Shown piece after piece: positions 1-22,900 of a DNA stretch of 64,000 bases. How positions within the stretch are numbered: position 1 is the first letter of the stretch; every line of letters begins with the position of its first letter. The notes beneath the pieces are model-generated. The model did no database searches. It was not told the origin of the DNA and saw only the letters and a list, made by a program, of their open reading frames with translations. Both the position numbers and the translations under genes were made by a program. Source of the DNA: Mytilus edulis (taxonomy: Eukaryota); contig NC_092346.1 of NCBI RefSeq assembly GCF_963676685.1, positions 60,698,001 through 60,762,000 on the forward strand. Reading direction: 5' to 3'.

Positions 1-388
1 AGTAATGTTATTTTCATTTATTATTAAAGACCTCTTCCGTTAGCCAGTTGTACATATGTTATGAATTGTCAATCATAACATGTATAAAACTGTTGTCTTC
101 TGCTTAAAATCAAGAAGTAAAAACCTAAGATAAAAGCACTTTGTTTATACTTAAGGAGGCTCGAGGGTATAAAATTTAAATTACAGTTTTTCCTTATAAT
201 TTGTTGATTGAAACCTCTTAACATATGGATGAAAAAAATGCAAAAAAAATAGGGGGTCACCGACCATCTAAGCGAGTTACCGACTGCTAAAAAAATAGGG
301 TTTTCCCTCATAAATCGATCAATTTTTACAAAGACTAATAGGGGATTTTGCACCTCCTTTACCTTAATCTTTAAGTATGGAGAGAACT

Positions 389-1220
389 AAATTACAGATT
401 TGTATAATACTTTCCATTCTAAGAGAGTTGATATTAAAGTACAAAAAAAGCCAAAAAAAATTGGGGGTCACCGACCTTTTAAGAGAGATAGATCACCAAT
501 AGTGTGAAACCATGGCAACCAAAAATGGTAATTTTTGAAAAAAAAATCAACTTTTCTTCCGTTTTTTTGGCTTTACCTGTACAGAAATAAAATCTGTTTA
601 TGGTTTACAGTACACATGATTGATATGCAGCCTATCATCTAGTTTAAGGTCATTTGATAAATTCTTAAGGTCAAAGGTGAAGACTATAAGGTACAAAAAA
701 TGTACATAGAAGTGCTAAATTTATGCTATTTTTTAAAGTTTTGATAAAACTTTAATAAGATCATTCGCTAAGTTAAATCTAAATTACAGATTTGTATTAT
801 ACTTTCCATTCTGAAGAGAGTTGGTATTGAAGTATAGAAAAGGCAAAAAAAATTGGGGGTCACTGATCTTTTAAGAGAGATAGATCACCAAAAGTGTGAA
901 ACCATGGCAACCAAAAATGGTAATTTTTGAAGAAAAAAACATTTTTCATTCATTTTTTTGGCTTTACCTGTATAGAAATAAAATATGTTTATTGTTTGCA
1001 GTACACATGATTGATATGCAGGCCAACATCGAGTTTTAGGTCATTTGTTAAATTCGTAAGGTCAAAGGTTAAGGCTATAAGGTACATAGAAGTGCTAAAT
1101 CTATGTTATTTTTGAAAGTTTTGTTAAAACTTTAATGAGATCATTCGCTAAGTTAAACCTAAATTACAAATTTCTATTATACTTTCCATTTTGAGAGAGT
1201 TGGTGTTGAAGTTCAGAAAA
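389..1220. repeat. Subterminal ~390-bp tandem duplication inside the Kolobok end (about 2.1 units)
   Basis: AAATTACAGATTTGTAT..TACTTTCCATT recurs at 389, 781 and 1161; GGGGGTCAC(C/T)GA motif near 253, 463 and 855. Confidence 0.85.
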
Positions 1221-2632
1221 ATATAGTCATTCTGGTACTGATAATAAGATAGATTTTAAATTTACAAAAAATCTTAATTTTTTTCAAGTAGTCACTGAAC
1301 TATAAAAATGAGGTCAAAGACATATGACATATGACTGAAAGAAACTTCGTAACGTGAGACATTCATATACAAATTATGAAGCATCCAGGACTTTCACCTC
1401 CTTAAATATAAAGCTTTTCATGAGTTAGCTAACGCTGCCTTCGCCAGATCACTATCCCTATGTTGAGCGCAGACTTGACAAAAAATATTCCTCCACTTTT
1501 CCTCCAAGTTTGACATGAGATAACTCTAATAATGCTAACCTCATTATAGTTCAATGAAAAAATAAAATAGGTGCATAATGCATTATGTCTCCTTGAAAAC
1601 TTCCTGACTTGCATGTCACACTTTTTTTTTTATTAAAGAGTTAATGCATATGGTTTAGATTAAGATGTTGTTTGTGTCTGTCCCAAGTCAGGAGACATTT
1701 AGTTCAGTGTTTGTGGTATGTTGCTGTATATACAATGACATGTATCTTTATTTTCATGTATTGTTCTGTACATGAATCAGGCCTCTGGTGATTATACATG
1801 TTATAAGTATCAATGGTCCAGGCCGAATCTTTATCGTGACATGTATATCATATCCTATCCACATTTGTGATAGGGCATAATGCATTATAATCTTAGTTTC
1901 TACATAAAATACAAATAAACAACTTGCAGTATAGGTGTCATTTATAATTATAACCATTTATTTGTGGACATACTTATGGTCCCATACATTTACAGATCCA
2001 TATATATTGTTACATTTAATCCAAAACCAATTAACTAATGACATTGTTTAAAAGTATGGTTTGATTAATGACACTTCTGATTCATATAATAAGACATTTG
2101 GACTATTATACTAACTGGACTAGAAACCATAACATCAAGCAGTGTAATAAACGAAGCAACATCATGGTCATTAGAACTATATTTTACAATATAGATCAAA
2201 ATTTAAATTGACATTGTTTTTAATGTAAACTAGTGATATTGGTGGCTCTTTCTTTTAATTGTCAATAAAATAACACCACTTGTTCAATACTTTGATGGGA
2301 AAATAAACAAATGTACTATGTATTGTTTCAATCCCTACAGAATGTCTTGAGAGGAAGATTTTCATTAAGATTAATCAATGAACCATTTACATTCAGACAG
2401 GATGGCTATCTTTCTTTAACAATTGCAACTAATATCGGTCAACACTTAAAAAAGTCATTTATTGATAGAAATAAATTCATCTGGAAAGTTCTAAAATTCT
2501 GTGTATAAAGCAGGAGATTATACAAAAACTATTTACAGACAAGTCATGATTGGTGATGAAAATTGCCAAAAAGGTTAGCTGAAAAGATATACATGTAATA
2601 TATAAGTCAATATAATTACAAAGAATTATCAA

Positions 2633-5600
2633 CTAGCTTTCAGGTGTTAGGAAGTCAAATATTTTGCGAATGACCTTCATACAATTTGTGACTCGAACAT
2701 TTCCTCTGTCAGTTTTTTCAGACAATAAAGCTTTTAATCCTTCTAGACCCATTCTCTCAATAGACAGTTTCAGATGAGAAAGCTTTAAGTTGGATTTTGA
2801 TGCCTTCAAAGCAGTGGCTCGTGATACTGCTTTACAAGCAATGGCTTCATTGTAAGACTTCAAATTGTCTTGCTGGACTATACAGTCATAAGGATGACTT
2901 ACAGGAAATACAAATGCATCCAGATTGTTTAAGGCTTTTGAGGTTAATAATTTAAACAATGCTCTAGTGTCATCAACTGCATTGTGTGCACAATAGTTTT
3001 CACCGAGAATATGTGACACCAATGAAGTTTGAGAATATGATGGTAATCCTGGCATTATCTTCTTAAATAGCTCCAGAGTGTCTACAAACCCACATACATG
3101 AGATGAAAACTCATTCCACATCTGATTTGCCTTTAAAGAATAATACAAAACATGGCAGTCGAATCGTTTGATGTTGTGTCCTACTAGAATTGGCTTTGAT
3201 GGATATTTGGAAAGAAATGTTATAAAATCAGTGAGAGCTTCATGTGGTAACTTGTACGAAACAGGTTGTAAATCATAAAACATCTGATTAGCAGAAACGG
3301 TAATTTTTGTTATTTCGGAGGCCTGTATTGAGATTGGTTGGTTTGGAAAGATGTAACTGCTAAATTCATTATTGCTTGAAGTTGCAGCAATCTGTATAAC
3401 ATCTGATGTTCTATCTGGAAGAAAAAATATTTAAATATTTCTCAATTTATACAAAATATGTCACCTGCTAATTTTATAGTTTTAGCAATTGACGTATTAA
3501 CCTTATCACCAAAATGAATTGACAAGTGTGCACACCCTGAAATGTCTCGTCTTCTTTACTAATCATTGATATTATGTTGATAGTTCTAAGCATAAAGCTT
3601 AATTACAACTGTCACATAAACTTAACATTAACCAAGATAACTAAACAAAGACCAATAAACCATAAAAATGAGGTTAAGGTTAGATTACCCATGCCAGGCA
3701 GACATGTACAGCTAACAAGTTCCATACAACCAATATAGTTGACATATTACTTATAGTTTAAGAAAAATAGACCAAAGCACAAACACTGTGCAATGAACCG
3801 TGAAAATGAGGTCACATAAAGTAAAACCTGCGTGATTGACATACAGATCATAAAATATTTCCATACACCAAATATAGTTGACCTATGGCATATAGTATTA
3901 GATAAAAAGACCAAAAATCAAATACTTTACTTTGACCACTGAATTAAATTTTTTTTTAATTTTAAATGTTAAACTTGTTTTATATTTTTAAAAGGACTTA
4001 CATAGGCTTGTAGTTTCTAAATCAAAGACTACCAGTGGAGCTGTAGAAATATCTATCGGTATACATAAAGATGCATTCATTGGAGCAGGGATTTCTTCAT
4101 CTAACTGCTCATTGTCCATTCCTATAACACATTAAGTTTTGTAAAGACAAAATTGCAGATTTTAATTGTTACATACATGTATGGTATAAAATGTTTTTGT
4201 ACATATGTTTGAGTGCATAACTTTGCATCAATTTAACAGACAAATAAACAGGCTCTCCCCTTAATAGACAACTGTATTGTATTTGAAGATCTTTACCTAA
4301 TGGATAATTTTTTCCCAATGTCATGCTTTGGTTATTGAGATATATACATTTGCAAGCAAAATTCTACATTTGCAAGCAAAATCTACATTTTATCCATATT
4401 TCTAGTTTAAGCCATGGCAACCATCTTGGTAAGCTGGCCGGGTCATTAAACACATTTTTTTAACTAGATACCCCAATAATGATTACGTCTGGTTGAATTT
4501 GACCCAGTAGTTGCAGAGGAGAAGATTTTTGTAAAAGTTAACAGATGATGGACAACAATCAAGACAGATGAAGGAAGCTAAATGCAAAGTGATGAGAAAA
4601 GCTCACTTGGCCCTTTGGGCAAATTGAGCAAAAGATGAATATCTTAAATTGAAACTGTGTCAGAAGAGCAATACATTACGCCATTTTTATGAGGGCTTGG
4701 ATAAAATTTAAAAAAAGGGCAGGATAGAAGTTCTGATTAAAGAAAATGCAATGCGATTTACCTATTTCACTTTCATAAGTTCTTCCTTCTCTCATTTCAA
4801 CTCCGGTACTTTTCACTGATCTTTCTTTTTTTAGATTGATTCTTCTTTTTTTGTGTTGCTTTGTTTTGGCTCTTTCAGATTTTTTATCCCTCTTTCCATT
4901 CAATCGTATAGCCCTCTTGATAGTCTCATTCCCTGGTGACAATCCAGCTGCTTCACTCACCTTAAAATATAAATAAAAAACAAAATGTATAAATAAGATA
5001 TGAGTATCGTCCTAAAAGTTATTTAAGAATTGACTGTTTCTTTTTGTTTAAAATTTTAAGTTTGATGTAAAAGCATTGATCAAGGCACATGTTATATTTA
5101 GTTAGGTTTGTTAACACATACCCCATTTCAATTTTAAATTTTATTTCTTAAAATAACATTTCACCTTTGAAATATACTGGTTGTATAGTGAGATAACAGA
5201 TCTCCCTTAACTTGTTTTTAAACATTAGGGAGCCATTATTGAATTTCAGTTGGGGGAGGGGGTATAACTGTTGTGGGAGTAAAACAAAATATTTTCGCAC
5301 TAAGTTATTGCATTGAGTCTATGATGCAAATAATATTTTTTTCAAAATTAAAAACTATCGGTGGAAATTTTGATACAGAATATTTTTTGTCATTTGATCG
5401 AACAGAATATTTTTTTTCATCAATATACATCAAAATAACTTTATTATGGAAAAAAACATAAAAGTGTAATTAGCAAATAATTAATATTACCTTTGACACA
5501 TAACCATATCCCTCATTCTTTTGTAAAACTGCGGCACTGACACGATAATTTAAACTGGAGGAGCCCGAATAATGTTTATTCTTTGCTGCCTTGGTCGAGA

Positions 5601-8600
5601 CCGTATGGTTAAAGCTCTCATTTGCTTGGGAACTGGCAAGTTTTGATAGTTTCTTTGATTGGCTCTCTATTTTTCCAAGAAACAATTTCTCCAGATCAGC
5701 TCTGAGACTTTCAGATTTCAAGTCCTTTCCGAAAGGTAAATTTGTGTGCCTGTATGACGCTCTGTCTTTTAAAAAACCACACCATTTTATATCACAGTTT
5801 TCGTGTTTCCCATACATATGATCAATCATCCCTCTTACTCCTTTTTCTATTTTTTCTGGAGAACCTTGATTTTGTGCCAACATGTATGAATAGTTCTTGG
5901 TAATTGAATTGATAACCATTGGTGTCAACTCTTTTTGCTTTGGTTTAAGAGTGTAAAGCTTTTTGGTGACATTTATGATGATATGATTTCTGTCGCTTGT
6001 TTTTACCATTTTCGAATTTGGTAGTAGTTTTTTTACCCGGTCAAACCCAACCGAATCGTCATCACCTGCCAGTTCATTTATATTGATATCTTGTTCATGT
6101 ACATCTTTCACTAACTGAACTACCATGTCTGGTTCCATGCCTTTTGCTGTTCCTGACCAGTTTTTCTTACAGTTGTGGGGTAACGGTGGTCCTCCCTTCT
6201 TTTGTGCATTCCGACATATACGGCAACCAGCAATTCTGAGGGTGTGATGCACAATTTTCCCTGTTTTTTCCCCTATCAGTGAGGCCACACCTGAAAAGTG
6301 AAATACATACATGTATGCTAATGCAAGTAAGTGTAAAAATTTTAATATGGAGTTATCATGTTGCTATACTACTCATTTAAAATGATTGTTTAATTTTTTT
6401 TATTTGGTTTGCATATCTATAAATACTTGACTTGGTTAAGTCAATTCAAATTTTTCTCTTGGTTTAAAATTAGATAATTCATGTTGCCGAAACTCATTTC
6501 ATAATCTGTTTATGCATGCTACACATGCTTGCAGGGATCCTATGTTTTTCAGCAAATTGAGATTGAATAACAAATAATAATTACCAGCTATGCAGGGCAC
6601 AGCTTGATACTTAAGTTAATGTCCGAACACTAAGTGATTCCCATTATGATTAAACAAATTTTTCAAAGAAAAAGGGGGGGGGGGGGGGCGCCCTGAAAAA
6701 ACCCTATAAATCTCCCTCTCAGGATTCACAAATATTTGGCTGAAGAATTATCAGGATTATGGGGGCTCGCAGGTCTAAATCATTTTTTTTATTTAATATA
6801 AGATTTTGCTAATTTTTTCTATAAATGAACTTTATCTTATACCTAATAAAAAAATGAAATAAAAAAGAGGGGTAACCGATCATTTACGCTCACAATCTGC
6901 CTTCGAAAGAAACATACATTTTGTAAATGTCCTTTTTCTGTTGAACTAATAGGAGGAGAAAAAGATGTAATGTCGAAATAAAAAAAGAAATCAAGTACAG
7001 AAATCGCTTAAATTTTACAATTATTTAGTTTATGTATATAGCTTATTTGAAAACAACAATAAAAAATATAGGTCACCGATGAGTAAAAAAAAAGATATTT
7101 CAATTTTCATGCCAAAAAATTGCATTTTTGCACCAAAGGGAGATAATTTCGAGCTTTTTCAATGATATCTTCCTTTAAAAAGTCAGCTGGGGCCAACACA
7201 AATTAATTTTTTGGAATGATTTTTGTGCCATATGATAAAGTAACAACTACTTAAGGTAATTTATAAAATTTGTTAAGAAAATTAAATGTTTAATTTTTTT
7301 CTGAATATCTTATACCCGCGAGCCTCCTTAAGCACAGTTTTTGTCTGAATTTGGTGTCCATACTTTTCAAATCTGTTCTAAGATGGGCATTTTATAACTA
7401 TATACGAATGTATATGGAGCATGATTTTTTTCTTTCTATTTTAATATTTGTATATTTGTACCATTTCTTTAATTATATTACCTGCACATTTTTTGGGTCC
7501 TATTATAAGTCCAATATGATTTTATATTTACCTGACAAACTATTATAAGCCCTTCCGGAACCTTTTTTTTGCCAACATGTGTCTGTGGATGCATTAATAC
7601 CTGCTTGTTCATTACCCTCTGTAAAAAAATATTAGATTTGTAGTGCAGTACCTGGAAGTCATGTATTTAAAATCAGATATCCAGCCCTAAAGACATAAAC
7701 CAAAAGGTAAAACTTAAGCATTAAAAATATACCAAATTGGCTCCAGTGTTGTAGAGCCAAATTGTTCTTTACTTTATACATCAGGACTTAAGCTGAGAAT
7801 TATCACTGATTTAATATGAAATGTTTTCATAGAAATAAACCTAAACACAAAACTTAACCACAAAATTAAGGTATTAAAGTGATTGTGGCACCTTCATCTT
7901 ATCGTTAGCTATTTATTCAGTCATTTCATATATACTGAGCCAAAAAAGTTTATATACAATAAAAGAAAAGTTCCTAACTGATTATCTATAAAATATATAA
8001 ATATAATTGTTTTTTATCCTGCAATTAGAAAACTTATGTACAAATTACAGGTATAAAAGTATATTTTTGCCTAACCAGTTCGTTTTAGGGTCTTCTTCAT
8101 GGTCCACATTTCAACTAAATGTATGTCAATTTTTTTTAAATGTAGTTTTTGAGTTTTTTCAGGATTTACACAATATATGTACATAGATGGAAAATATATT
8201 ATTTATTTATACTTGCTAGGAAACAGGAGAACAGCTTGGCAGTTTAACACATACATGTATTGTATAGGCATTAACATATACATGTCAATATATAAAATGA
8301 CATTGGTAAAAGTTGTAAGCCATTGTATCTACAATGAACATGTATATGCAAATGACAGGATCTGGACTATTATTTTTACAAAATTATTGTATTAAATTTT
8401 CATTCAAACCTGCATCAATGGTCATGGACTGGAAAGCTTCATCGAGTAAAAACTTCCTTTCTGAAGCATTTGCCTGATACTCCATTATATCCCCAACCTC
8501 ATTTTCTCTTGATTTTAGGGACTTGTGGTGAGGATAATGCACATTCATGGCAGCAAGTAAATTGTTCAGCTGTGTTTCACCAATACCTGCATGAATCATA

Positions 8601-11600
8601 CCTGTTAATATAAAAAAAAATACAAAAATATAAAATAACAAGCAATTTAAAACACCAGCAAAATTGTAAGAGTACATATAGCTTAAATTATACCATATTT
8701 AGACCATATGTTTATGTACATGTAGGAAATTGAAAAGTAAGCAAAATTAATTTTGTGACAATGCAAAATAGGGAATTATTATGTCTGACCAGGATGAAAT
8801 TGTATTTTTCAAATTATCACACTACATGCAGCTGATTTTAGTTCTGGTGTGCTAATATTATATACAATAAATCTTGCAAATTCAAAATTTAAGAGGATTT
8901 CCATGCTGACAATTAAGATTGACATGTGCATAAAGATACTCTGACATTACCATTATCAAAAAGTGAACTCTTATTCAGTTTCTTGTTGGCTGGCATTAAA
9001 AACAGAGGACATTATCAAGTTCACTACCTCATCATTTGCCCTACCCTATTCATTTAATGTGCAATACATGTACTGTGTACCCAATTTTTTTTTTAATAAT
9101 TCTTGTATATGAATACTATCAAATGACTATTTTGGTTATTAAATTAAATTTCCTCAATTTTACAGTTGATATTTTACTTTAATGCATCATGTAGCATTTT
9201 GAAATTAAACAAAAAACAAATATGCTCTTTAAATTTGAATTGTCAGAACTTCAGATAAGGGATTGTTCAATATTTATCAGATGGATGGGCCGGTGCAAAA
9301 TGGGGCGGGGCAAGAACTTTTTTTAATATATATAGTGGATGGGCTAGAACTTATTTTATTGGAAAAAATGCTCTCAATTTTATCGGTGTGTAGGAAATTT
9401 CTTTTGAAGGCACAAAAAACATAAGGGACATGGTCTCAACAATAATTTTCAGTTTGGGCTAAATCCAGATAGTCATCTTTTAATTTTTTTATAACTTTTT
9501 CAAATCAACATGAATTTTCATGAATCTCTACAATAATTTCATTTATATATTGATCTTACAGAATACCAGGTTGTTTGGTAGTTAAGTGAATTGCTGTCAT
9601 TCTATGGATTGAATAAATAGGTTAAAAAAAAGCAAATTTTACTGTTTTGGCTAAATCCAGATAGTCATCTTTTAATTTTTTTATAACTTTTTCAAATCAG
9701 CATGGATTTTCATAAAACTCTATAATTATTTCATTTATATATTGATCTTACAGAATACCAGGTTGTTTGGTAGTTTGGTGTATTGCTGTCATTCTATGGA
9801 TTGAATAAATAGGTTAAAAAAAAGCAAATTTTACAGTTTTGGCTATATCCAGATAGTCATCTTTAATTTTTTTCATAACTTTTCCAAATCAAGTGTCATT
9901 TTCATTAAACTCTATAATTGCTTCATTTATATATTGATCTTACAGAATACCAGGTTGTTTGGTAGTTTGGTGTAATGCTGTCATTCTATGGATTTAAAAG
10001 AAAGGTTAAAAAAGCTAAAAATTTCAGTTTAGGCTATATCCAGATAGTCATCTTTAATTTGTTTATATCTGTTTCAAATTAACATGGATTTCCATAAAAC
10101 TCCATAGCTATTTCATTATATATTGATCTTACAGAATACCAGGTTGTTTGGTAGTTTGGTGAATTGGTGTCATTCTTATGGATTTAATAAAAAGATTAAA
10201 AAAAGCTTAAATTTTCAGTTTAGGCTAAATCATTGGATAGTCATCTTTAAACTTATTTATAACTTTTTTAAATCAATTTAGATCTTCATATAACTCTACA
10301 GCTATCTCATTTATATAATAATCTTACAGAATGCCAGGTTGTTTGGTGTTTAACATTAATACAATCAAATTTACGGAATTAATTAATTGGTGAAAAAGGG
10401 TGCATCAAAGTCAAAAACATGTCTGCCTAAATTAATTAAAAAGACCATAATTTCTTTTTTGAAAAGTAGATTACATAAAGGGACATAATGACAATGGTAT
10501 TTGATCTATATTTAACATGCGGTGTTATTAAGACAATAATTAGTAATTCAGCATATGATAATAGTTTTACTAGTCCAAGAGTTATTGTCTCTTAGTTTAG
10601 ATTATTTCCTTTATTTTTTAAAATCAATATTGTATCTGAGGATGCAAATATAAAATCAAATATATACATGTATACTCATACTGGTTTTTAAAAAAAACAA
10701 TAAAATGTATGGTTCTGATACACACATGAATATATTTATTATATATAAATGGAATTAACAAGCACATTTTAAATTTTGTATTTACACCAAAGTCTATTTT
10801 TTGATTTCAAGACATAAATTTGCAAACTTACAAATAGAAAAAGAAATTTAATATTTTTTGATTGTTTTAAGCTTTAGATGGGCAAGGACTTTTTTTACAG
10901 ATTTTTTGAGATGGGCAAGGACTTTTTTTCAGAATTTAAAAGGATGGGCAATCACTTTTTTAATGAATCAATATTAAGAATGCAAAGGCCCATCCATCTG
11001 ATAAATATTGAACGGTCCCTAAGATGTCTTAAAATAACATTAAGTTTCATGTAATGTATCAACCTGTGGCCACTAATAATTCTAATATGGCTAAGCCAGT
11101 CTTGGAATTAAGTATTTTCTGGACTTTTCATAGTTTATTACAAACATATATTTATAAATGTATATATAATCTGCCTCACCAAGTTTGTGTGTTTGTAACA
11201 TGTTTTCTGCTTTTTATTGATCTGATGAGATATAAAAATAAGCCCTTTTCAACTGTCAGCTTATTCTATTTTGTTCATAAATTGTGCTGAATATGTACAA
11301 CACTGTCCTAAGAAGGGCACCAGCAAAAAATTTAACCCCTCCATATTCTGTATGCTCTTGTGCCAAGTAAGGTGTCTGTGATTCAGTGCTTCAATTTGAT
11401 TTAATGCTGTGTAACATATTTATTTTTCATTTATTGCTAAGATTAAACATTTCATAAAATTGTAAGTTTTTTTGTTTGAATTGTTTTACAATTATCATTT
11501 GGGGCATTTATAGCTGACTATACTATACATGTATGTGGTATGGGTTTTGCTCATTGTTAAAGGTTGGATGGTGACATTCAGCTGTTAAATTGTATGTATT

Positions 11601-12366
11601 TGGAGTCTGTTGGTAAAATGGTCTTATTAGCAAACATACCACAACTTTTTTTTTATACATAATACATTTTTCATGTATGCAATGACCAAGCTATATCTTA
11701 TAATTGAAAGAACATTGGTTTACCTGCAGCTAATTTTGTATTTACATCAAATCTACCAACTCCTCTTTTATTCTTATTTGCATAATGTGTTTTCCCTAAT
11801 CTAATTTTAGCAACATCTCCACATTCTGAACATTGTACATACAAAATACCAGCAACACCATAAGGTTTAACTCCCAATGAATTTTGTAAGTGTAAGGGCT
11901 CTTCACATTTTGAACATTGTTTCAACTGCTGAACAATATAGTCCAGTTCAACCACATATCGACAGTGGTTTAGTGGTAGTAAATCAGAGGGTAGCGGTAA
12001 GAAGTCAAAGTCAACATTTATATCATTATCATCATCAATTACTACTTCATGAATATGATCTTCTAAATTAGGTTCAACCTCAAAAGCATCATTTATACAT
12101 AATTCAGATGTTTCAATTGTTTTCGGTTTGGCATATGAGTGGTCAGGTTCTAACTCTGAGTTTTGATTATGGACCGGGTCAAATGAAGGGCTATTGTGGT
12201 GGTCAGGTTCTAATATGTTTTGAGAATCTGAATCAAGTGGTGAAATATTGTGGTGGTCTGATACTGATAGCAATCCACTTCTATGAAACACTAGCCCACT
12301 GATCCTTTTGTCTTTCTCGAAATTCTTCTTTTTTGAAAATTTTCCTTGTTTGTTTCTTTTAGGCAT
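2633..12366 (-). CDS. Spliced Kolobok DDE transposase with C-terminal DEDDh 3'-5' exonuclease, ~940 aa
   Basis: Exons 12366-11724, 8601-8410, 7618-7532, 6290-5491, 4960-4762, 4121-4002, 3414-2633; all GT-AG, phases consistent, total 2823 nt = 940 aa + stop. Transposase motifs: CxxC..CxxC zinc ribbon, STDTCWQKKGSGRAYNSLSG (D1), HNCKKNWSGTAKGME, AGDDDS (D2), HMYGKHENCDIKWC, QANESFN (E), EGRTY. Exonuclease motifs: VVFDLETT (ExoI), GHNIKRFD (ExoII), FVDTL, AHNAVDD (ExoIII). Confidence 0.88.
6761..7327 (+). mobile_element. Non-autonomous Kolobok MITE sharing termini with the enclosing element, inverted, in transposase intron 3
   Basis: Starts GGGGGCTCGCAGGTCTAAAT, ends TATACCCGCGAGCCTCC; flanked by TTAT/TTAA; internal GGTAACCGAT and GGTCACCGAT motifs like those in the large element's subterminal region. 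Confidence 0.85.
9259..11019. mobile_element. PIF/Harbinger-type non-autonomous element carrying an internal ~191-bp tandem array
   Basis: TAA TSD (9256-9258, 11020-11022); ~33-bp TIR GGGATTGTTCAATATTTATCAGATGGATGGGCC / GGCCCATCCATCTGATAAATATTGAACGGTCCC. Confidence 0.85.
9448..10350. repeat. Tandem array, unit 191-192 bp, ~4.7 copies
   Basis: GGCTA(A/T)ATC..GATAGTCATCTTT recurs at 9457, 9649, 9841, 10032 and 10223. Confidence 0.9.
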
Positions 12367-12900
12367 TGTTTAGCAGACGATACTATATTTTACGATTGTC
12401 GTGATTTTATAACAAAGAATCATCATTCAAGGATTTACAAAATTTCATTGACTAATTCTGAACATACCTTTTACATACTCACCACTTATCTCTTTCTTTG
12501 GGTGGATCTACGTGTTGAAAATTAGTAATACAGCTTAAAAATATACCGAAATGAATACAAATTATCACAAACATTGATAGTCATTCTAGTATAGATATAA
12601 AAGCTGGTTACTTGTCGAAATATTGAAAGCAAGTTTCTTCCGAGATTCCAAAATGGCGTATCTCGATGTCAACAAACCGTAAAAGAGTCGACTTTGAAGT
12701 TTCAAATACCGTCTTCAATTTAATTTCTGTGAATTATGAATCGAAAAAACAGTAACCTAGAACAGAAATAGCTAGTGTTTTATAAATGTTTATTATCAAG
12801 AAGAAAGTAAATATTTTGCGACGTTCGAACCGATTACCGTAATGGATGCGCACCAATCAACTCAACGGGCGCGAAAATTTAAACCCGCGAGCCCCCTTAA

Positions 12901-16900: not shown

Positions 16901-19900
16901 TTGTCAGTCTGTCTGTTCATCTGTTCATTTAATCAGGTTCCCTTAATCTGTTCGTCAGTCTGTCTGTTCATCTGTTCGTCAGTCTGTCTGTTCATCTGTT
17001 CGTTTAGTCAGGTTCCCTTAATCAGTTCGTCAGTCTGTCTGTTCATCTGTTCGTCAGTCAGGTTACCTTAATCTGTTCTCTTGCCAATAGCAGACATAAA
17101 TTATTTGCGAGTTTTTCATAAATTTTTTAAAACTTCTATTTTGATTTCTGATTAAAACTAATGAAGATAAAATCAATTACTACATCTATTCAATCTTACC
17201 CAAAGTTTCCTTGCAATACTCTCCCTAAACATTCTGTCTACATCAACTTGATAAAACAACTGAAAAATATTTCAAAATTAATAAATGATAAAATCTCAAT
17301 CTTTAAAATTACAATAATTACATTACATGTATGTTTCATTATACATTTCAAAATGAATTCCATGAGGTGAACCAACGCCTGTGTGAATCATTTCAATAGC
17401 GTCCGTGAAGTGGATACCTTGGTCAAATTATGCAAATGAATGCAAAATTAAAATAATACTCTAAATTGACAACAACACTTCAAATGGTCTGCAATTTTAT
17501 TTGCTATGGTCTACATGTTTCGCCTGCAAGGCAGGCTTCATCAGGACAATTTTTATACAAAAATTAATCCCTGAAGTACTCAAAGTGGTGCAAATTTGAC
17601 GTCGTCATGATGAGAGAAACAATGAAAAGTGAAAGTAGCAATACAGAGTTATAAATAGATAAGATAAATAAAGAAAATTAAAGTTTGTTTACAATGTAAC
17701 ACGAGTTCGTTTTACTATTATATGATACATGAAATTGTTCTTTAGGTTTGGTATCTAATTGGACGAACTTCCCATTGTTCCTACCCCTTCGCAAGGCTTC
17801 TCTTCCAACCTTATAATATCCCAATAAATTTACAAAAAGAAGCATTCAATTCTTAAATAAAACACTGAACAACTTGAATAGCTTGTGAACTCTGATTCAA
17901 CATGATAAGAAACTTATCTAATCTAGGCTATACAGCTTACTAAATTTTTTTACATCCACTTCATTTGAACTTTGGTGGATAGTTGTCTCTTTAGATATCA
18001 TCAATTTGATACTAGGAGAGAGAGAGAGTGCATTGTTCATAAGGAGGCAAATACCAAAAGAGATGGTTGGTTTATTGTTTTTTTTTAAAATCTGAAATAG
18101 CATTATCTTAACATAGCAATGTAATAGAATATAGGTGAAGTAAGTGTGTTTACCCTTTCTGTAATGCCTTCACCTACAGTCCACTTTTGTAATTGGGTAC
18201 CAGATAGTACATAGAATGAAAAATCATCATCATCTTCTGTTAGACCAACAGTAATGGCTTGTAATGGCTAAAACATTCGGTAAAGAAATGATAAAATATC
18301 ATATAAATTACAGTTACATACAGATAAATCAATCTCAAACCATAATATTGATGCCAACCAATATGTATCATTTTAGCCTTACTATGCTTTGTGATTTGGG
18401 GGCCTTTTATAGCTGACCATGCGGTATGGGCTTTGCTTATTGTTTAAGGCCTTATAGTCCAGTCATTCTAGCCAAAATATGACCAAACCTCAAACTAATT
18501 GCAACAGAATGTTCTTCTAGTTTTCCAAGCTGGTTTAGGTGTACTGTTGAACATAAAAAAAATCGAGAATGTTTGGATGAAGGGAAATTGTTAATTTTGG
18601 GTGAAAACCTTGATTTTTTGTGAAAAATCGCTGAAAACTGGTGATTTGCCGTGACTCAAAAACAAAAATAGCAACTTGCATAATTTTTAATGAAGTCAAT
18701 AGATCTTAATACAGTAATGATTTATTTAAACGTTCATTTATTTAAAAGATCAGGAAATTGAAAATTTTGGGTGAAAACCTTGAATTTTGATGAAAAATCG
18801 CCGAAAACTGGAAATTTGCCGTGACTAAAAAACAAAAATAGCAACGGACACAATTTTTAAGAAAGTCATTAGATCTTATTATAGTTATGATTTATGTAAA
18901 CGTTGATGAACTGCAAAGATCAGGAAATTGAAAATTTTGGGTGAAAGCCTTTGATTTTGATGAAAAATCGCCGAAAACTGGAAATTTGATGCGACTAAAA
19001 AACGAAAATAGCAACGTACATAATTTTTAATCAAGTCAATAGATCTTATAACAATAATAAAGAAATATAAACTATGATGATTTTTGAAGTATAGGAAGTG
19101 ATAATTTTGGGTGAAAATGTTAGTATTTTTGATAAAAACTGGGAATTTATGTTTTCTTAATAAAAATCAAATTATATCATGAGTCTTCAAATTAATTTTA
19201 TATATATGTGAAGTGTTTAGATGGATCAAATAATGACCAATTCGTAAAATCAATAGATCATATAACAACAATAAAAAACGATTGACCGGTATTATACTTT
19301 TTTTTAAACCAAAATATTTACTTTATATGATAACAAAACCATGCAATTGTTTACCGAAACCCCTTAATTATGCTTATTATGGTTTTTGCGTACTCTACAT
19401 AAATCTTTAGAAATTGATTGTCACTTAATCGTCCATGTCAACTGTTTTGCTCGAATTTGTACAACCAGTTCCTTTACATTCGCCACAAGCTACTGAACAT
19501 TCAAGTCCGTTTTTTCTACAAGTACATCTTTTAGTGTCACAGTTTGTCTTACAATTGCATCGAATAATGTTCAGCAATTTAGAGGGAGCTGCGTCCATTG
19601 TACACTTAACCGGAACAAGGTTTCCATTAGCGACTTTCCAACCCCATTCACACGGATTTAGATTGTCCTTGTTCATCCACATTTTCATTTGAAGATAAGC
19701 TCTCTGGCTATGAAATGAAGCCGCATTTGATGTTGGCGGCAAAGTATGAATTTGAACGCATGTTTTGTTTGTCAATACTCTTGCAGCAAACTTCCTGTAG
19801 CGAAGAACATTCAGTCCTTCATATGGAGCACCATTATATAAAGAGGAAATAATGTTTTCACCAGCAGAAATAACATCATCATTTGCGTTAGCATTGTAAA

Positions 19901-22900
19901 GTAACTGTGCCTGACTCTTAAGAAAGTCATGTTCTCCAAATTTCTTTAGGGTCGCTGCCTTACTGACACCGAACATTCTTGAAGTTGTGTCACAACCACT
20001 GATAGCATGAATTAAAGGTAAAAATGTACATAGTTCCTCACCAAGCAGCAATTTGGTCTTCAAAATATCCCATATTTTAATATGTGTGTTAACTTTTGAC
20101 ACATTGCCGGATTTGAATATCAGCGAATTTGATGTAACGTCCGCATGATGAAGGAGTAGTACCAAAAGATCAGTGTCCTCTCCAAGCAAAACAGTTGCTT
20201 TTGTTTTCGCTGATTCGATGGCAGTAAGGGCAATCAAAACATCAGCATCGGCATCTGCGTGTTTAGTTTTGATTCCCTTTTCTACCATCTTTGCACTCAA
20301 GAGATTAATAAAGTTCTGCTTATTCTCAATGTTTGCTAAAAATATTTCTTTTTTAGATTTGAAAGGAGTTCTTTCTGTGAATGAAACTTTTGTGCCTATG
20401 ATTCCTTTGGTGCGCCGCTGATGAGTGGCATCTTTAGTATCTGGACCCGAAGCATATCCATCAAATACAACTATAGCTTTACTGTATTTCCGTTCTACGC
20501 TGTCAATGTACCTTTGACAAATTTCACCGAAAGAAAGTCCGCTTTGCCAGTGTATACGATGGAGAAGAGAGCCGCCATCAATAACATACTGAGTTTCGTC
20601 GTTTTCGCTCATTTCAAATGCGCAACAGTCGCCCTTTCCCCAAATAGCATCTGCAAGACTAGACTTTTGCGCTGTTCGCATGAGACCATTTGGATCAAAC
20701 ATTGAGCTGGGATGACTACAGAGTTCATAGGTGAATATTTCGGACTGATCTTCATATATGCCATTTGATGCAGCAAGAAAGCGCTGGAAGAGAAGCTGTG
20801 AATCAACAATAATGACATCATCATCAACTTTGATAGCCGATTTTGCACTTAAGATAGTGGCCTGTTCTTTCCTTTTAAATGAAAATTCATCTATTTTTTT
20901 TCCGTCCATGGACTTCAGTATTTTAATGCCTAATTCCCTCGAATTATCAACATTGACAAATTTGTCCGCCGAGACCCCTGTTTCTATGTTTCGCAAACTC
21001 GTTTCCTCTACAAAAGGACTTCTGTTAATAAGAAACGATAAAAATGTTTTCAAATCTTGACAGTCTCTTGATCTCCTTGACTCCCCACCTTCTTTATGTT
21101 GGTCACTTGTTCCATAATTGACTCCAGTAAACTCTTGCAAAGCATTGTTCATTTCCGCGCAGTCTGGCATAGATAAAATCCATTGGGCTCGCTGACCCTC
21201 TGACATACCTCTTCCTCGAGTCATACCGCCTGTCGTCTTTAAGCTTCTCATTAAAACCTGTTCTATGACCAAATCAGAAGAAAGACCTGCCCAAAATTTA
21301 TCACTCCTCCTTATAACATGATGGCCTGATTGTAGAAAAGCTAATACTTCGGGATGGGTTGTTTTCAAGTTCTCCATTTGTTGTAAGTATACCCGTGATG
21401 ATTTGACATACAGATTGTGTCCCGAAGCTGCAAGATACGGAAGCATGTCCTTGACTGTCTGTAAATGTAGTTCCCAGTTACCAGTCCTTTCAGCTTTGAT
21501 GAATCTACGGAGAATATCTATCATATCCATATATTGGAACCATAGTTGTGAAGTACGATAACTTTTGTGTGACTCCCGAAAGTTATCTATCCTAGATTTA
21601 ATTTGATCTATTAAAACATCGTCGCAAGCTTTTTCGACAGATATGTCTCCTTTCAGTAGTTCATCCAACATCGCATCTGCTTCATGCAATTCATCCGAAA
21701 GATCATCAGCGTTAATATCGGTACTGTTGGTATTTATGTAATTTGCTGGATTAATATCATTGGTACCAGTCTCATTTTCGATTTCATCTGGAAGTGGTAT
21801 GCCGTATATGTGTGACAAGATTATTGACGTGAGAGCTGTATCTATCAAAAAATGTGCCCTTACTGCTCGTGCAATCGCCTTTCCACTAGTCATATGAGTT
21901 ACTGCATTTGGTGCATACACTGTTTCAAGTAGCTCAGTGATTCCTGATCCTTCCATCAAGTGACCAATGCCGCCTACAAAACTCATTTCTAAATGAAAGC
22001 CTCCAAGTCTCAAGATAACTGACTTTAAAGGACTGTTCAATGGTTCATCTTTAATTATGTTCATTGCCTTCCAATAGAGGGGTTGATCAAATGTCAAAAT
22101 AGGTACACAATGTTGAGCCTTTGCGTGCTTGCCTATGAAGTTAAGTGTTGAATTTATACATGTGAGATCACTAGGATTCATGTCTATCATTGGCAAAAAA
22201 ACAACAGATGATCTTCCTGGGTAGTCACCGTCCATCACTTTGTGCATTATTGCGGACCAACTGGGTCGGTTGCATGTCAAAGGCCAGCATACTTTTGACA
22301 GAAGGTCTAACTTCCACGTTGTATCGATCATATTTGGCTCATAATTCATGGTTGCGAACTCTGCCTGTAATGATTGTTTAGATTGCATTTTATAATATTC
22401 TATGTTAATTTTTGCTAGGTCAGAGACTTCCTTTAGTGTGGGAGACAGCCTAGGGACAGCTTTGTCAAGTCTGAATCCTGGAGTGACAGCTGCAATCATG
22501 CCCATACCATAAAATGTTCCATGACCGTCTAAAGTTCTCAGATTATGGTCTACGTTATCAGCTATGTACTGAACGAAAGTGCCATTCCCAAACTGTGTGT
22601 TGGTTCTGTCATGAGCAGCAGCAGCAGCATTAAGTTCAAATCGTTGAACCTCTGTGTAGGAAGAAGCGAAACCAAGAGTGTTCAAAGTGTCCAATAAAAA
22701 TCTTGATCCAAAGTGATGGTGCATTTGTACACTGAGGGCAATTTGTAGCGGTGCAATAAGTGTTCTTGGTCGGGAAGCCTGAATAATAGCTTGACCAACA
22801 GATGCAACTTTAACAGAAGAGTCGTTTTGACTAAATAATGTACGTAGTAATGTTTGTAACGAATCTGGGACAAATGTAATGTTTTGCTCTGAGTTTATAT

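What the first reader, a model, noticed from the sequence alone, without database searches (positions are those of the whole stretch)
155..12896. Intact Kolobok transposon whose transposase is fused by splicing to a complete DEDDh 3'-5' exonuclease
Seen: seven phase-consistent exons give one 940-aa frame. Two key exons are absent from the ORF track: 7618-7532 (first catalytic D) and 4121-4002 (ExoI motif FDLETT). The DDE triad and all five DEDDh residues are present, and TIRs plus TTAA TSD are intact. Established: canonical Koloboks have a THAP-DDE transposase and a separate KolX protein, and the variant lineages I recall carry a His-Me finger nuclease, lambda-type exonuclease or RecQ helicase. 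DEDDh enzymes of the TREX1/PML-C type degrade ssDNA and retroelement cDNA. Inference: this is a distinct architecture (no THAP or KolX visible). The exonuclease could trim excision or target ends, remove immunostimulatory DNA by-products, or antagonise competing retroelements, and such elements could be a mobile source of PML-like exonucleases. I cannot confirm it is unreported.
Basis: partly seen in the sequence, partly recalled or inferred. Interest (0 to 1): 0.85.

Follow-up and report, generated by a model that had tools for sequence, protein, structure and literature searches.

The report
Expressed KolobokD transposon with exonuclease fusion
This is a complete, transcribed cut-and-paste DNA transposon of the blue mussel from the KolobokD lineage described in 2022; its transposase is joined to a 3'-5' exonuclease that is unexpectedly close to the fish Plex9 / PML exon-9 exonuclease.

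Summary
Window 155-12896 is bounded by TTAA duplications and imperfect inverted ends. Seven GT..AG exons on the minus strand give exactly 940 codons. An RNA-seq contig joins exons 2-7 at the predicted junctions. The DDE triad and all five DEDDh residues are present.

The novelty claim fails. Kojima and Bao (Mob DNA 2022, PMC9587614) named KolobokD, a Kolobok lineage that encodes a DEDDh exonuclease and occurs in molluscs, arthropods and cnidarians. This element meets every sequence feature that paper gives. The genome, most likely Mytilus edulis, holds more than 30 such loci in many subfamilies. Some carry both domains in one uninterrupted ORF. One unrelated family has its own TIRs and TTAA duplications.

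The remaining interest is the exonuclease module, an EXO domain plus the SAM-like Pfam domain PML_C. Its nearest solved relatives are fish Plex9-family exonucleases (E 1e-33 to 3e-39), against Exuperantia at 1e-4 and TREX1 at 0.01. In a tree, paddlefish PML-like and teleost Plex9-like proteins sit among transposon-borne exonucleases, but only under midpoint rooting. The PML papers I read never mention transposases.

The scan reached the same reading on another piece of this genome (s1-834641). I file this as a new member of a known kind, of moderate interest.

The parts
151..154 (.). Target-site duplication TTAA at the exonuclease-side end
   Evidence: A 98.9%-identical copy on C2 has the same TTAA and TIR but a different flank (TCTAGC against TTATAC), and homology stops at the TTAA.
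155..177 (+). Terminal inverted repeat, GGAGGCTCGAGGGTATAAAATTT (5'-RR terminus)
   Evidence: By my own count, 19 of 23 positions match the other end.
387..1220 (.). Subterminal tandem repeat, 392 bp x 2.2
   Evidence: It is also duplicated in the C2 copy.
1930..2632 (-). 3' UTR (inferred), with AATAAA at 1962-1957
   Evidence: The X7 contig runs 690 nt beyond position 2620. The AATAAA is seen. The 3' end itself lay outside the laid stretch, so this is inference.
2633..3414 (-). Exon 7 with stop codon: rest of the DEDDh EXO domain (ExoII D at 3160-3158, ExoIII H at 2986-2984 and D at 2971-2969) plus the SAM-like PML_C domain
   Evidence: Pfam RNase_T 1.8e-9 and PML_C 3.2e-13. Acceptor site. 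RNA joint 4002/3414. PDB Plex9-family hits at E 2e-31 to 5e-22.
4002..4121 (-). Exon 6: linker and ExoI motif FDLETT (D at 4023-4021, E at 4017-4015)
   Evidence: RNA joints 4762/4121 and 4002/3414.
4762..4960 (-). Exon 5: basic, lysine/arginine-rich linker between transposase and exonuclease
   Evidence: It aligns to residues 314-392 of the intronless L008 ORF.
5491..6290 (-). Exon 4: transposase core. In order: CCHC zinc finger, second catalytic D (DDD), DxxH (SDRNH), an H/H/C/C zinc finger, last catalytic E (NES).
   Evidence: Pfam PF20700 at 2.2e-41. Invariant columns. RNA joints.
6761..7327 (-). Nested non-autonomous element (MITE) of the same TIR family, in intron 3, in the opposite orientation. 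Flanked by TTAT and TTAA.
   Evidence: In the old copy L001, window 6759 abuts window 7328, an empty site.
7532..7618 (-). Exon 3: first catalytic D (codon 7583-7581) in STDTCWQKKGSG
   Evidence: RNA joints 8410/7618 and 7532/6290.
8410..8601 (-). Exon 2: N-terminal part of the transposase domain (PF20700 profile positions 77-127)
9259..11019 (.). Nested unrelated high-copy element in intron 1. It has 40-nt TIRs, a TAA duplication (9256-9258 and 11020-11022) and an internal 192-bp tandem array. It is Harbinger/Tourist-like by its duplication.
   Evidence: It is absent from copies L001 and L004.
11724..12366 (-). Exon 1: start codon, acidic and low-complexity N-terminus, CxxC...CxxC zinc ribbon (PF20700 profile positions 2-79)
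   Evidence: It is the only intact copy of this exon in the assembly. It is collinear with the RefSeq model P0190.
12874..12896 (-). Terminal inverted repeat at the 5' side of the gene. Reverse complement GGGGGCTCGCGGGTTTAAATTTT, so the + strand ends in YY.
   Evidence: An identical end with TTAA and a different flank occurs on C4 (L005).
12897..12900 (.). Target-site duplication TTAA

Best explanation
Window 155-12896 is a structurally complete, transcribed, autonomous DNA transposon of the KolobokD lineage of the Kolobok superfamily. The host is a Mytilus genome, most likely M. edulis.

Its single seven-exon gene encodes a 940-residue protein made of four parts:
- an N-terminal zinc ribbon;
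- a Kolobok DDE transposase carrying the DxxH signature and two zinc fingers;
- a basic linker;
- a C-terminal module made of a DEDDh 3'-5' exonuclease and a SAM-like (PML_C) domain.

**Shown:** the anatomy, the splicing of exons 2-7, conservation of the catalytic residues, and mobility of related copies.

**Inferred:** the transposase binds the GGRGGCTCG ends, excises the element and inserts it at TTAA. The covalently tethered exonuclease acts in cis within the transposition complex, trimming or degrading 3' ends of DNA intermediates. Those could be excised-element ends, donor flanks or stray single-stranded by-products. This is what Kojima and Bao proposed for KolobokD.

Two things point to a role tied to transposition rather than a passenger gene. 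Many divergent subfamilies keep the exonuclease fused to the transposase, some by splicing and some in one ORF. The active-site residues are invariant.
For: **Ends and duplication.**. Independent insertions share each end with different flanks: the C2 copy for the left end and the C4 copy for the right end.

**Gene model and RNA.** The model is. A spliced RNA contig links transposase and exonuclease exons. The RefSeq model P0190 of the sister family is collinear with six of the seven exons; the short E6 gave no hit.

**Kolobok signatures.** CCHC after the first D, DDD, DxxH, the H/H/C/C finger and NES are invariant in 8 homologues. They match the description in PMC9587614.

**Exonuclease.** The DEDDh residues are invariant or nearly so in 47 homologues. 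Pfam finds RNase_T and PML_C.

**The fusion is general.**
- More than 30 loci in this genome pair the two exons on one strand.
- Three single ORFs of 648-691 aa carry both domains.
- 32 of 49 long database representatives carry PF20700 together with the exonuclease.
- A family only 40-46% identical has two 14-15 kb copies, 95-99% identical to each other. They are bounded by TTAA and their own TIR, with unrelated flanks.
Against: - No biochemical evidence exists for either activity.
- In this subfamily only the window copy has an intact exon 1. The 98.9% copy on C2 lacks exon 1 and the right end, and the others are decayed. Current mobility of this particular copy is therefore unproven.
- The two ends match at only 19 of 23 positions.
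- The transcripts come from other individuals or species labels. At the sites that distinguish the window copy from the C2 copy they are a mosaic, so they show expression of the family, not strictly of this locus.
- Depth in the two raw-read RNA runs is near zero.
- RNA did not test the E1/E2 junction.
- I could not compare the element directly with curated KolobokD consensus sequences, because Repbase is not on hand.
Confidence: 0.88

Rival explanations
1. The exonuclease is a counter-defence or 'hygiene' factor rather than part of the transposition chemistry. Like TREX1 and Plex9, it would degrade cytosolic single-stranded DNA, excised-transposon by-products or retroelement cDNA. That would blunt DNA sensing by the host, or suppress competing retrotransposons.
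For: - Its closest solved relatives are Plex9.1 and TREX-type enzymes.
- Plex9 and gar PML suppress LINE-1 and can complement TREX1 loss (PMC10123124, abstract as listed; I recalled its content before reading it here).
- The module carries a SAM-like domain, as do the RNA- and DNA-binding proteins Exu and PML-1 PXL (PMC13659232).
Against: - The module is tethered to the transposase in all lineages examined. A freely acting cytosolic enzyme would not need that.
- No localisation or activity data exist.
- This function does not exclude a cis role.
Confidence: 0.25
2. The locus is no longer a transposon but a host gene: a domesticated transposase-exonuclease fusion kept for a cellular function.
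For: - There is only one fully intact copy of this subfamily.
- It is transcribed and correctly spliced.
- It is present at near identity in runs under three species labels.
Against: - It retains both TIRs and TTAA duplications.
- A 98.9% copy and several older copies lie at unrelated sites.
- A MITE with the same ends has inserted nearby, which implies a recent source of transposase.
- Sister families have multiple near-identical copies.
Confidence: 0.07
3. The transposase belongs to the Mutator (MuDR/MULE) superfamily, as the Pfam name PF20700 'Mutator-like transposase' suggests. It could also be a piggyBac, because of the TTAA duplication.
For: - Pfam's best match is named Mutator-like.
- Kolobok, MuDR, P, hAT and Dada share the C/DxxH signature (PMC9587614).
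- piggyBac also duplicates TTAA.
Against: - The duplication is 4-bp TTAA, not the longer duplication of MuDR elements (about 9 bp, from my own knowledge).
- The termini are GG..CC. PMC9587614 gives RR..YY termini as the feature that separates Kolobok from piggyBac.
- No piggyBac family is among the Pfam matches.
- The zinc finger between DxxH and E, and the CCHC finger after the first D, are the Kolobok and KolobokD features described.
Confidence: 0.03

Closest known systems
KolobokD lineage of the Kolobok superfamily (Kojima and Bao, Mobile DNA 2022, 13:24; PMC9587614)
   Same: - TTAA duplication and RR..YY termini.
- DDE transposase with DxxH, a zinc finger before the last E, and a CCHC finger after the first D.
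- An encoded DEDDh (DnaQ) exonuclease similar to Exuperantia and TREX.
- A mollusc host.
   Different: Nothing in kind. New details here:
- the seven-exon structure with RNA support;
- the SAM-like PML_C domain behind the exonuclease;
- the number of subfamilies in one mussel genome;
- the much closer similarity to Plex9 and PML-like proteins than to the TREX, Exu and ERI1 named in the paper.

I could not check whether this exact family is in Repbase.
Fish Plex9 exonucleases and the PML-I C-terminal DEDDh exonuclease domain (Mathavarajah et al., NAR 2023, PMC10123124; PDB 9MRC, 9MRD, 9L8B, 9L85)
   Same: - The same EXO fold and DEDDh residues.
- About 39-45% identity to a mussel KolobokD module. 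The lower figure is; the upper is my estimate from the alignment.
- E 3e-39 to 1e-33.
- TM 0.93 and rmsd 1.1 A to Plex9.1.
- The Pfam PML_C domain is shared with PML.
   Different: - Plex9 and PML are host genes at a syntenic vertebrate locus. They have no transposase and no TIRs.
- The solved Plex9 constructs are the EXO domain alone.
- Amniote PML has lost the catalytic residues.
Drosophila Exuperantia (PDB 5L80, EXO-like plus SAM-like domains)
   Same: The same two-domain EXO plus SAM-like arrangement. Foldseek E 2.9e-13 over 308 columns. The Pfam family Exu_RNase_H_like also matches.
   Different: Exu is a catalytically dead RNA-localisation factor and a host gene. Sequence similarity is weak (E 1e-4).
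TREX1 / TREX2
   Same: DEDDh 3'-5' DNA exonuclease fold (Foldseek E about 1e-8).
   Different: Only marginal sequence similarity (E about 0.01). There is no SAM-like domain. These are host genes.
KolobokE, KolobokH and KolobokP (accessory lambda-type nuclease, RecQ helicase, His-Me finger nuclease)
   Same: The same superfamily and the same principle: a DNA-processing enzyme coupled to the transposase.
   Different: A different accessory enzyme. KolobokP also has long terminal direct repeats, which are absent here.

Membership tests
Kolobok superfamily | [quoted passage not shown] | tested here: met
   TTAA at 151-154 and 12897-12900. It recurs at independent copies on C2 and C4 and in a second family on C7 and C14.
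Kolobok superfamily | Termini 5'-RR ... YY-3' (the feature that separates Kolobok from piggyBac) | tested here: met
   The element starts GG and ends CC. The distant second family on C7 and C14 starts CG and ends CG, so the rule is not universal in this genome.
Kolobok superfamily | [quoted passage not shown] | tested here: met
   First D in E3. In E4, DDD at residues 76-78, D99-x-x-H102 and E224 are all invariant in 8 homologues.
Kolobok superfamily | Zinc finger between C/DxxH and the last E | tested here: met
   H157, H162, C165 and C170 are invariant.
Kolobok superfamily | Sequence clustering with curated Kolobok transposases (Repbase) | not testable with these tools
   No Repbase or Dfam library is on hand. 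Pfam's only model, PF20700, is named 'Mutator-like'.
KolobokD lineage | Second, CCHC zinc finger downstream of the first catalytic D | tested here: met
   CRIC...HNC in E4. H38 is invariant, and the cysteines are conserved in the full-length rows.
KolobokD lineage | Encodes a DEDDh (DnaQ) exonuclease | tested here: met
   Pfam RNase_T. ExoI, ExoII and ExoIII residues are present and conserved. The exonuclease is fused to the transposase on one spliced RNA.
KolobokD lineage | Phylogenetic placement of the transposase with the published KolobokD families | not tested
DEDDh exonucleases (Pfam RNase_T, PF00929) | D-x-E (ExoI), D (ExoII) and H-x4-D (ExoIII) | tested here: met
   FDLETT, RFDCHV and AHNAVDD. 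In 47 homologues D19, E21, D111 and H169 are invariant, and D174 is conserved in at least 90%.
DEDDh exonucleases (Pfam RNase_T, PF00929) | 3'-5' exonuclease activity | not testable with these tools
   This needs biochemistry.
Plex9 / PML C-terminal exonuclease family | Close sequence and fold similarity to Plex9.1, and presence of the PML_C domain | tested here: met
Plex9 / PML C-terminal exonuclease family | Host gene at the PML-syntenic locus of jawed vertebrates, without a transposase | tested here: not met
   Here the module is the C-terminus of a transposase, inside TIRs, in a mollusc. It is a relative of that family, not a member of it.
MuDR / Mutator-like elements | Longer target-site duplication (about 9 bp, from my own knowledge) | tested here: not met
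   The duplication is a 4-bp TTAA.
piggyBac | piggyBac-type transposase and termini | tested here: not met
   The termini are GG..CC, which PMC9587614 gives as the feature separating Kolobok from piggyBac. Pfam reports no piggyBac transposase family.

The most novel reading that the evidence does not exclude
The EXO plus SAM-like module of vertebrate PML-I exon 9, of the fish Plex9 and PML-like genes, and perhaps of insect Exuperantia, was acquired by domestication of a KolobokD transposon's accessory exonuclease.

**What the evidence shows.**
- Mussel KolobokD modules are about 39-45% identical to fish Plex9-family proteins.
- They share the PML_C domain with PML.
- In a tree, paddlefish PML-like and teleost Plex9-like proteins form one clade (SH-aLRT 94). 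It is sister (81) to an oyster clade that includes a transposase-fused protein. Both lie inside a larger transposon-borne group (92) that contains this window's exonuclease.
- A KolobokD-type fused protein is annotated in a newt.
- The PML papers I read place the origin of PML in jawed vertebrates and never mention transposases.

**Caveats.**
- The tree is rooted only at its midpoint.
- The sequences are the 150 nearest to a mussel query.
- True PML sequences were not included.
- The reverse direction, a transposon capturing a host gene, is not excluded.
Probability: 0.4. Interest if true: 0.7.

Novelty: new member of a known kind. Interest (0 to 1): 0.4.

Why it matters
As a transposon it is ordinary: one more, well-preserved member of a lineage named in 2022. 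It is still a convenient reference copy, because it has a complete gene with RNA-supported splicing, both ends, and an empty-site control for its nested insertions. That makes it a candidate for expression and for transposition and exonuclease assays, which could test what a transposase-tethered 3'-5' exonuclease does.

The wider point is evolutionary. PML's exon-9 domain and the fish Plex9 restriction factors have no known origin before jawed vertebrates. A transposon-borne module of the same architecture, widespread in invertebrates and also annotated in an amphibian, is their closest relative found here. If the direction is transposon to host, a retroelement-restricting enzyme of vertebrates would itself derive from a DNA transposon.

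Tried and rejected
- **Whole-element DNA search of the genome.** It was swamped by the nested high-copy element and missed the near-identical C2 copy. Protein searches exon by exon found it.
- **Segmental duplication as the source of the C2 copy.** Rejected, because homology stops at the TTAA and TIR and the flank differs.
- **Pairing the four related ends as two overlapping elements (150-7332 and 6757-12900).** Rejected. The arrangement is a nested one: L001 shows the empty site of the inner 567-bp MITE.
- **Independent exonuclease gene.** Rejected by the spliced contig and by the single-ORF paralogues.
- **The search for homologous proteins.** It returned almost only Mytilus proteins, since it depends on shared words, and no fish proteins. 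The exhaustive search was needed.
- **Supplement of PMC9587614.** It does not label KolobokD sequences.
- **Bacterial promoter and terminator scan.** Not meaningful for a eukaryotic gene, so I ignored it.
- **Literature searches.** Plex9 with transposon, KolobokD, and exuperantia with transposase found no paper linking PML or Plex9 to Kolobok.

The joined 940-aa model was never built for, or sent to, any search or folding tool. Exons were searched one by one by reference. Natural uninterrupted ORFs of paralogues (L008, L009, L010) and database proteins stood in for the full-length protein.


Full report
**1. What is in the sequence**

The window is G000:C3:60698001-60762000 of a 1.37-Gb assembly with 14 large contigs. 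Two results point to Mytilus edulis. A 223-aa M. edulis protein is 100% identical to one of the loci (P0010). The RefSeq protein XP_071142257.1 of M. edulis lies on a contig of 82,303,794 bp, which is exactly the length of C12 here.

The element runs from 155 to 12896, with TTAA on both sides. One end begins GGAGGCTCGAGGGTATAAAATTT. The reverse complement of the other end reads GGGGGCTCGCGGGTTTAAATTTT. By my own count of those letters, 19 of the first 23 positions agree.

The inverted-repeat scan found four related ends in the region. They resolve as a nested arrangement:
- The outer pair is 155 and 12896.
- The inner pair bounds a 567-bp MITE at 6761-7327, flanked by TTAT and TTAA.
- An old, decayed copy on C10 (L001) joins window 6759 directly to 7328. 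That is the empty site of the MITE.

A second nested element lies at 9259-11019. It has 40-nt TIRs, a TAA duplication and a 192-bp internal array. It is a high-copy family of its own and is absent from L001 and L004.

**2. The gene**

The minus strand carries seven exons:

| Exon | Coordinates |
|---|---|
| E1 | 12366-11724 |
| E2 | 8601-8410 |
| E3 | 7618-7532 |
| E4 | 6290-5491 |
| E5 | 4960-4762 |
| E6 | 4121-4002 |
| E7 | 3414-2636 (stop 2635-2633) |

- All introns are GT..AG with pyrimidine tracts, and the phases agree.
- The total is 2820 nt, or 940 codons.
- Pfam places PF20700 on E1, E2 and E4 (profile positions 2-79, 77-127 and 172-357; the last at E 2.2e-41).
- Pfam places RNase_T and PML_C on E7.

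**3. RNA evidence**

- The RNA-seq run X7 has one 2884-nt contig that covers E2 to E7. Every joint falls at the predicted junction, and there are 0-3 mismatches per exon.
- Run X5 shows the same joints on separate contigs, one for E2-E5 and one for E6-E7.
- A few raw reads of two other RNA runs cross the 4762/4121 and 4002/3414 junctions.
- So transposase and exonuclease are read from one spliced RNA.
- At the seven exonic sites that distinguish the window copy from the C2 copy, the X7 contig is a mosaic. It is window-like at five sites and C2-like at two. It therefore comes from an allele in another individual, and it shows expression of the family rather than of this exact locus.
- The X7 contig runs 690 nt past position 2620, and an AATAAA lies at 1962-1957. 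This is a likely 3' end, but it is inferred.
- The E1/E2 junction lay outside the 6000 letters allowed. The 913-aa RefSeq model P0190 of the sister family aligns collinearly to E1-E5 and E7; the short E6 gave no tblastn hit.

**4. Catalytic residues**

- An alignment of E4 with seven homologues leaves these positions invariant: DDD76-78, D99 and H102 (the DxxH motif), H157, H162, C165 and C170, and E224-S225. The CCHC finger CRIC...HNC is conserved.
- The first D lies in E3, in STDTCWQKKGSG. That matches KYDMGWQKRGSG of the homologues.
- In the exonuclease, D and E of FDLETT (E6), D of RFDCHV (E7), and H and D of AHNAVDD (E7) correspond to columns that are invariant or nearly so in 47 homologues.

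**5. Is the fusion real and mobile elsewhere?**

- Exon-wise protein searches of the genome find more than 30 places where a transposase exon and an exonuclease exon lie a few kb apart on one strand. Identities to the window range from 35% to 100%.
- Three loci carry both domains in a single uninterrupted ORF: L008 (691 aa), L009 (656 aa) and L010 (648 aa). Each has PF20700, RNase_T and PML_C.
- The copy on C2 is 98.9% identical over 11 kb and includes both nested insertions. It shares the left TIR and TTAA but has a different flank. It lacks exon 1 and the right end.
- A copy on C4 shares the right TIR and TTAA with another flank.
- The window copy is the only one with an intact exon 1.
- A family only 40-46% identical has at least five copies with identical scores. 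Two of them (C7 and C14, 14-15 kb) are 95-99% identical. Homology ends at TTAA|CGAGGCCC... on both sides, and the flanks are unrelated.

**6. What it is called**

Kojima and Bao (Mobile DNA 2022; PMC9587614) describe Kolobok as having TTAA duplications, RR..YY termini and the C/DxxH signature. Most lineages have a zinc finger before the last E, and KolobokP, E, D and 5 have a CCHC finger after the first D.

They name KolobokD as the lineage that encodes a DEDDh (DnaQ) exonuclease. They found it in molluscs, arthropods and cnidarians, noted its similarity to Exuperantia, TREX and ERI1, and proposed that it degrades DNA intermediates from the 3' end.

Every sequence feature they list is met here. 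The architecture is therefore known, and this is a member of it. Pfam's name for the transposase model, 'Mutator-like', is a label. The 4-bp TTAA duplication and the zinc fingers argue against MuDR. The termini and the lack of any piggyBac family among the Pfam matches argue against piggyBac.

**7. The exonuclease module and its relatives**

- A sequence search of the PDB was run with the module of L008 (292 aa). It gives 9L8B at 3e-39, 9L85 at 1e-34, and 9MRC and 9MRD at about 1e-33. Exuperantia scores 1.7e-4 and TREX1 about 0.01.
- The window's own exon 7 gives the same order.
- 9MRC is zebrafish Plex9.1 (PMC13659232; title).
- 9L8B matches residues 1-189 of a Cottoperca gobio protein end to end at E 2.6e-124, so it is almost certainly that protein.
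- An AlphaFold model of the module has mean pLDDT 96.8. Foldseek ranks Plex9.1 first (TM 0.93 on the target, rmsd 1.1 A, 39% identity). Next comes the Exuperantia EXO plus SAM-like structure 5L80, aligned over both domains, and then TREX2 and TREX1.
- The exhaustive search of 1.84 billion representatives finds 2511 relatives at E up to 1e-3 and 194 at up to 1e-30.
- Of the 49 representatives of 455 aa or more among the best 150, 32 carry the transposase domain and 44 carry PML_C. None carries a TRIM or B-box domain.
- Named members include Mytilus, Crassostrea and Saccostrea proteins. There is also a 917-aa newt protein with PF20700, RNase_T and PML_C. Two 'Candidatus Thiodiazotropha' MAG proteins are presumably host contamination.

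**8. Tree**

I built an IQ-TREE tree (LG+C20+F+G4, SH-aLRT) from 77 exonuclease modules.
- Paddlefish 'PML-like' and two teleost Plex9-like proteins form one clade (support 94).
- That clade is sister (81) to a clade (99) that contains the transposase-fused oyster protein P0195.
- Both lie in a 44-row group (92) that also holds the window's exonuclease and its Mytilus relatives.
- 33 further transposase-fused proteins branch outside that group.

Under midpoint rooting the vertebrate genes are nested among transposon-borne modules. Four things limit this result:
- There is no outgroup.
- The sample is the 150 sequences nearest to a mussel query.
- True PML proteins are absent.
- Supports are moderate.

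The PML papers I read put the origin of PML and Plex9 in jawed vertebrates and do not mention transposases or invertebrate relatives. No paper in the library links PML or Plex9 with Kolobok. I hold the domestication reading at about 0.4.

**9. Mechanism**

- **Shown:** the anatomy, splicing, conservation and mobility of the family.
- **Inferred:** a DDE transposase that cuts at the GGRGGCTCG ends and integrates at TTAA, with a tethered 3'-5' exonuclease acting on 3' ends in the transposition complex. The fusion is retained across subfamilies that have diverged to 35% identity, whether by introns or in one ORF. That argues for action in cis.
- **Alternative (0.25):** a TREX1-like clean-up or counter-defence role.

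**10. Earlier notes of the scan**

A follow-up on another piece of this genome (s1-834641) reached the same reading, KolobokD with a Plex9-like exonuclease. I saw it only after my own tests. A further first-reader note (s1-837314) describes another such copy. These agree with my reading but are not independent evidence.

**11. Limits and housekeeping**

- The joined 940-aa model was not assembled for, or sent to, any search or folding tool. Exons were used one by one by reference, and natural uninterrupted ORFs and database proteins stood in for it.

**Verdict**

This is a new member of a known kind. Interest is 0.4, carried mostly by the link to Plex9 and PML.

Noticed in passing
window 9259-11019: A 1.76-kb non-autonomous element with 40-nt TIRs (GGGATTGTTCAATATTTATCAGATGG...), a TAA duplication and a 192-bp x 4.7 internal tandem array. 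It is high-copy in this genome, with dozens of hits at 85-92% identity. By its duplication it looks Harbinger/Tourist-like.
   Followed up: partly
window 6761-7327; also 155-350: A MITE with the same asymmetric ends as the autonomous element: a GGGGG-type end and a GGAGG-type end. It shares subterminal GGTCACCGA-like motifs and is inserted in the opposite orientation in intron 3. It is probably the non-autonomous partner family of this KolobokD.
   Followed up: partly
window 3420-4019 and 4420-4619 (introns 6 and 5): Very high RNA depth in all four runs, with consistent differences from the window and many loose ends. These are repeats transcribed from elsewhere, not part of this gene's mRNA.
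   Followed up: no
G000:C7:64498231-64513221 and G000:C14:11527369-11541483: A second KolobokD family, 40-46% identical in protein. It is 14-15 kb long, with TTAA duplications and the TIR CGAGGCCCRATCTA. Its termini are CG..CG, not RR..YY. At least five near-identical copies suggest recent activity.
   Followed up: partly
P0048 (XP_078534085.1, Lissotriton helveticus, 917 aa): A KolobokD-type architecture (PF20700 + RNase_T + PML_C) annotated in an amphibian. That is outside the host range given in the 2022 paper (molluscs, arthropods, cnidarians).
   Followed up: partly
P0030 / P0168 (MEW8547717.1, MEW8544937.1): Two proteins labelled 'MAG: 3'-5' exonuclease [Candidatus Thiodiazotropha sp.]'. 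P0168 has the eukaryotic KolobokD transposase-exonuclease architecture. P0030 was not scanned against Pfam. This is probably host (clam) DNA binned into a symbiont MAG.
   Followed up: no
P0020 (XP_029289261.1, Cottoperca gobio, 371 aa): This fish protein has two tandem Plex9-like EXO domains that are 91% identical to each other. PDB 9L8B matches its residues 1-189 end to end (E 2.6e-124).
   Followed up: partly
window 18455-25369: Earlier first-reader notes of the scan report an Academ transposon and a possible Nup133-transposase chimera further along this window. I did not examine them.
   Followed up: no
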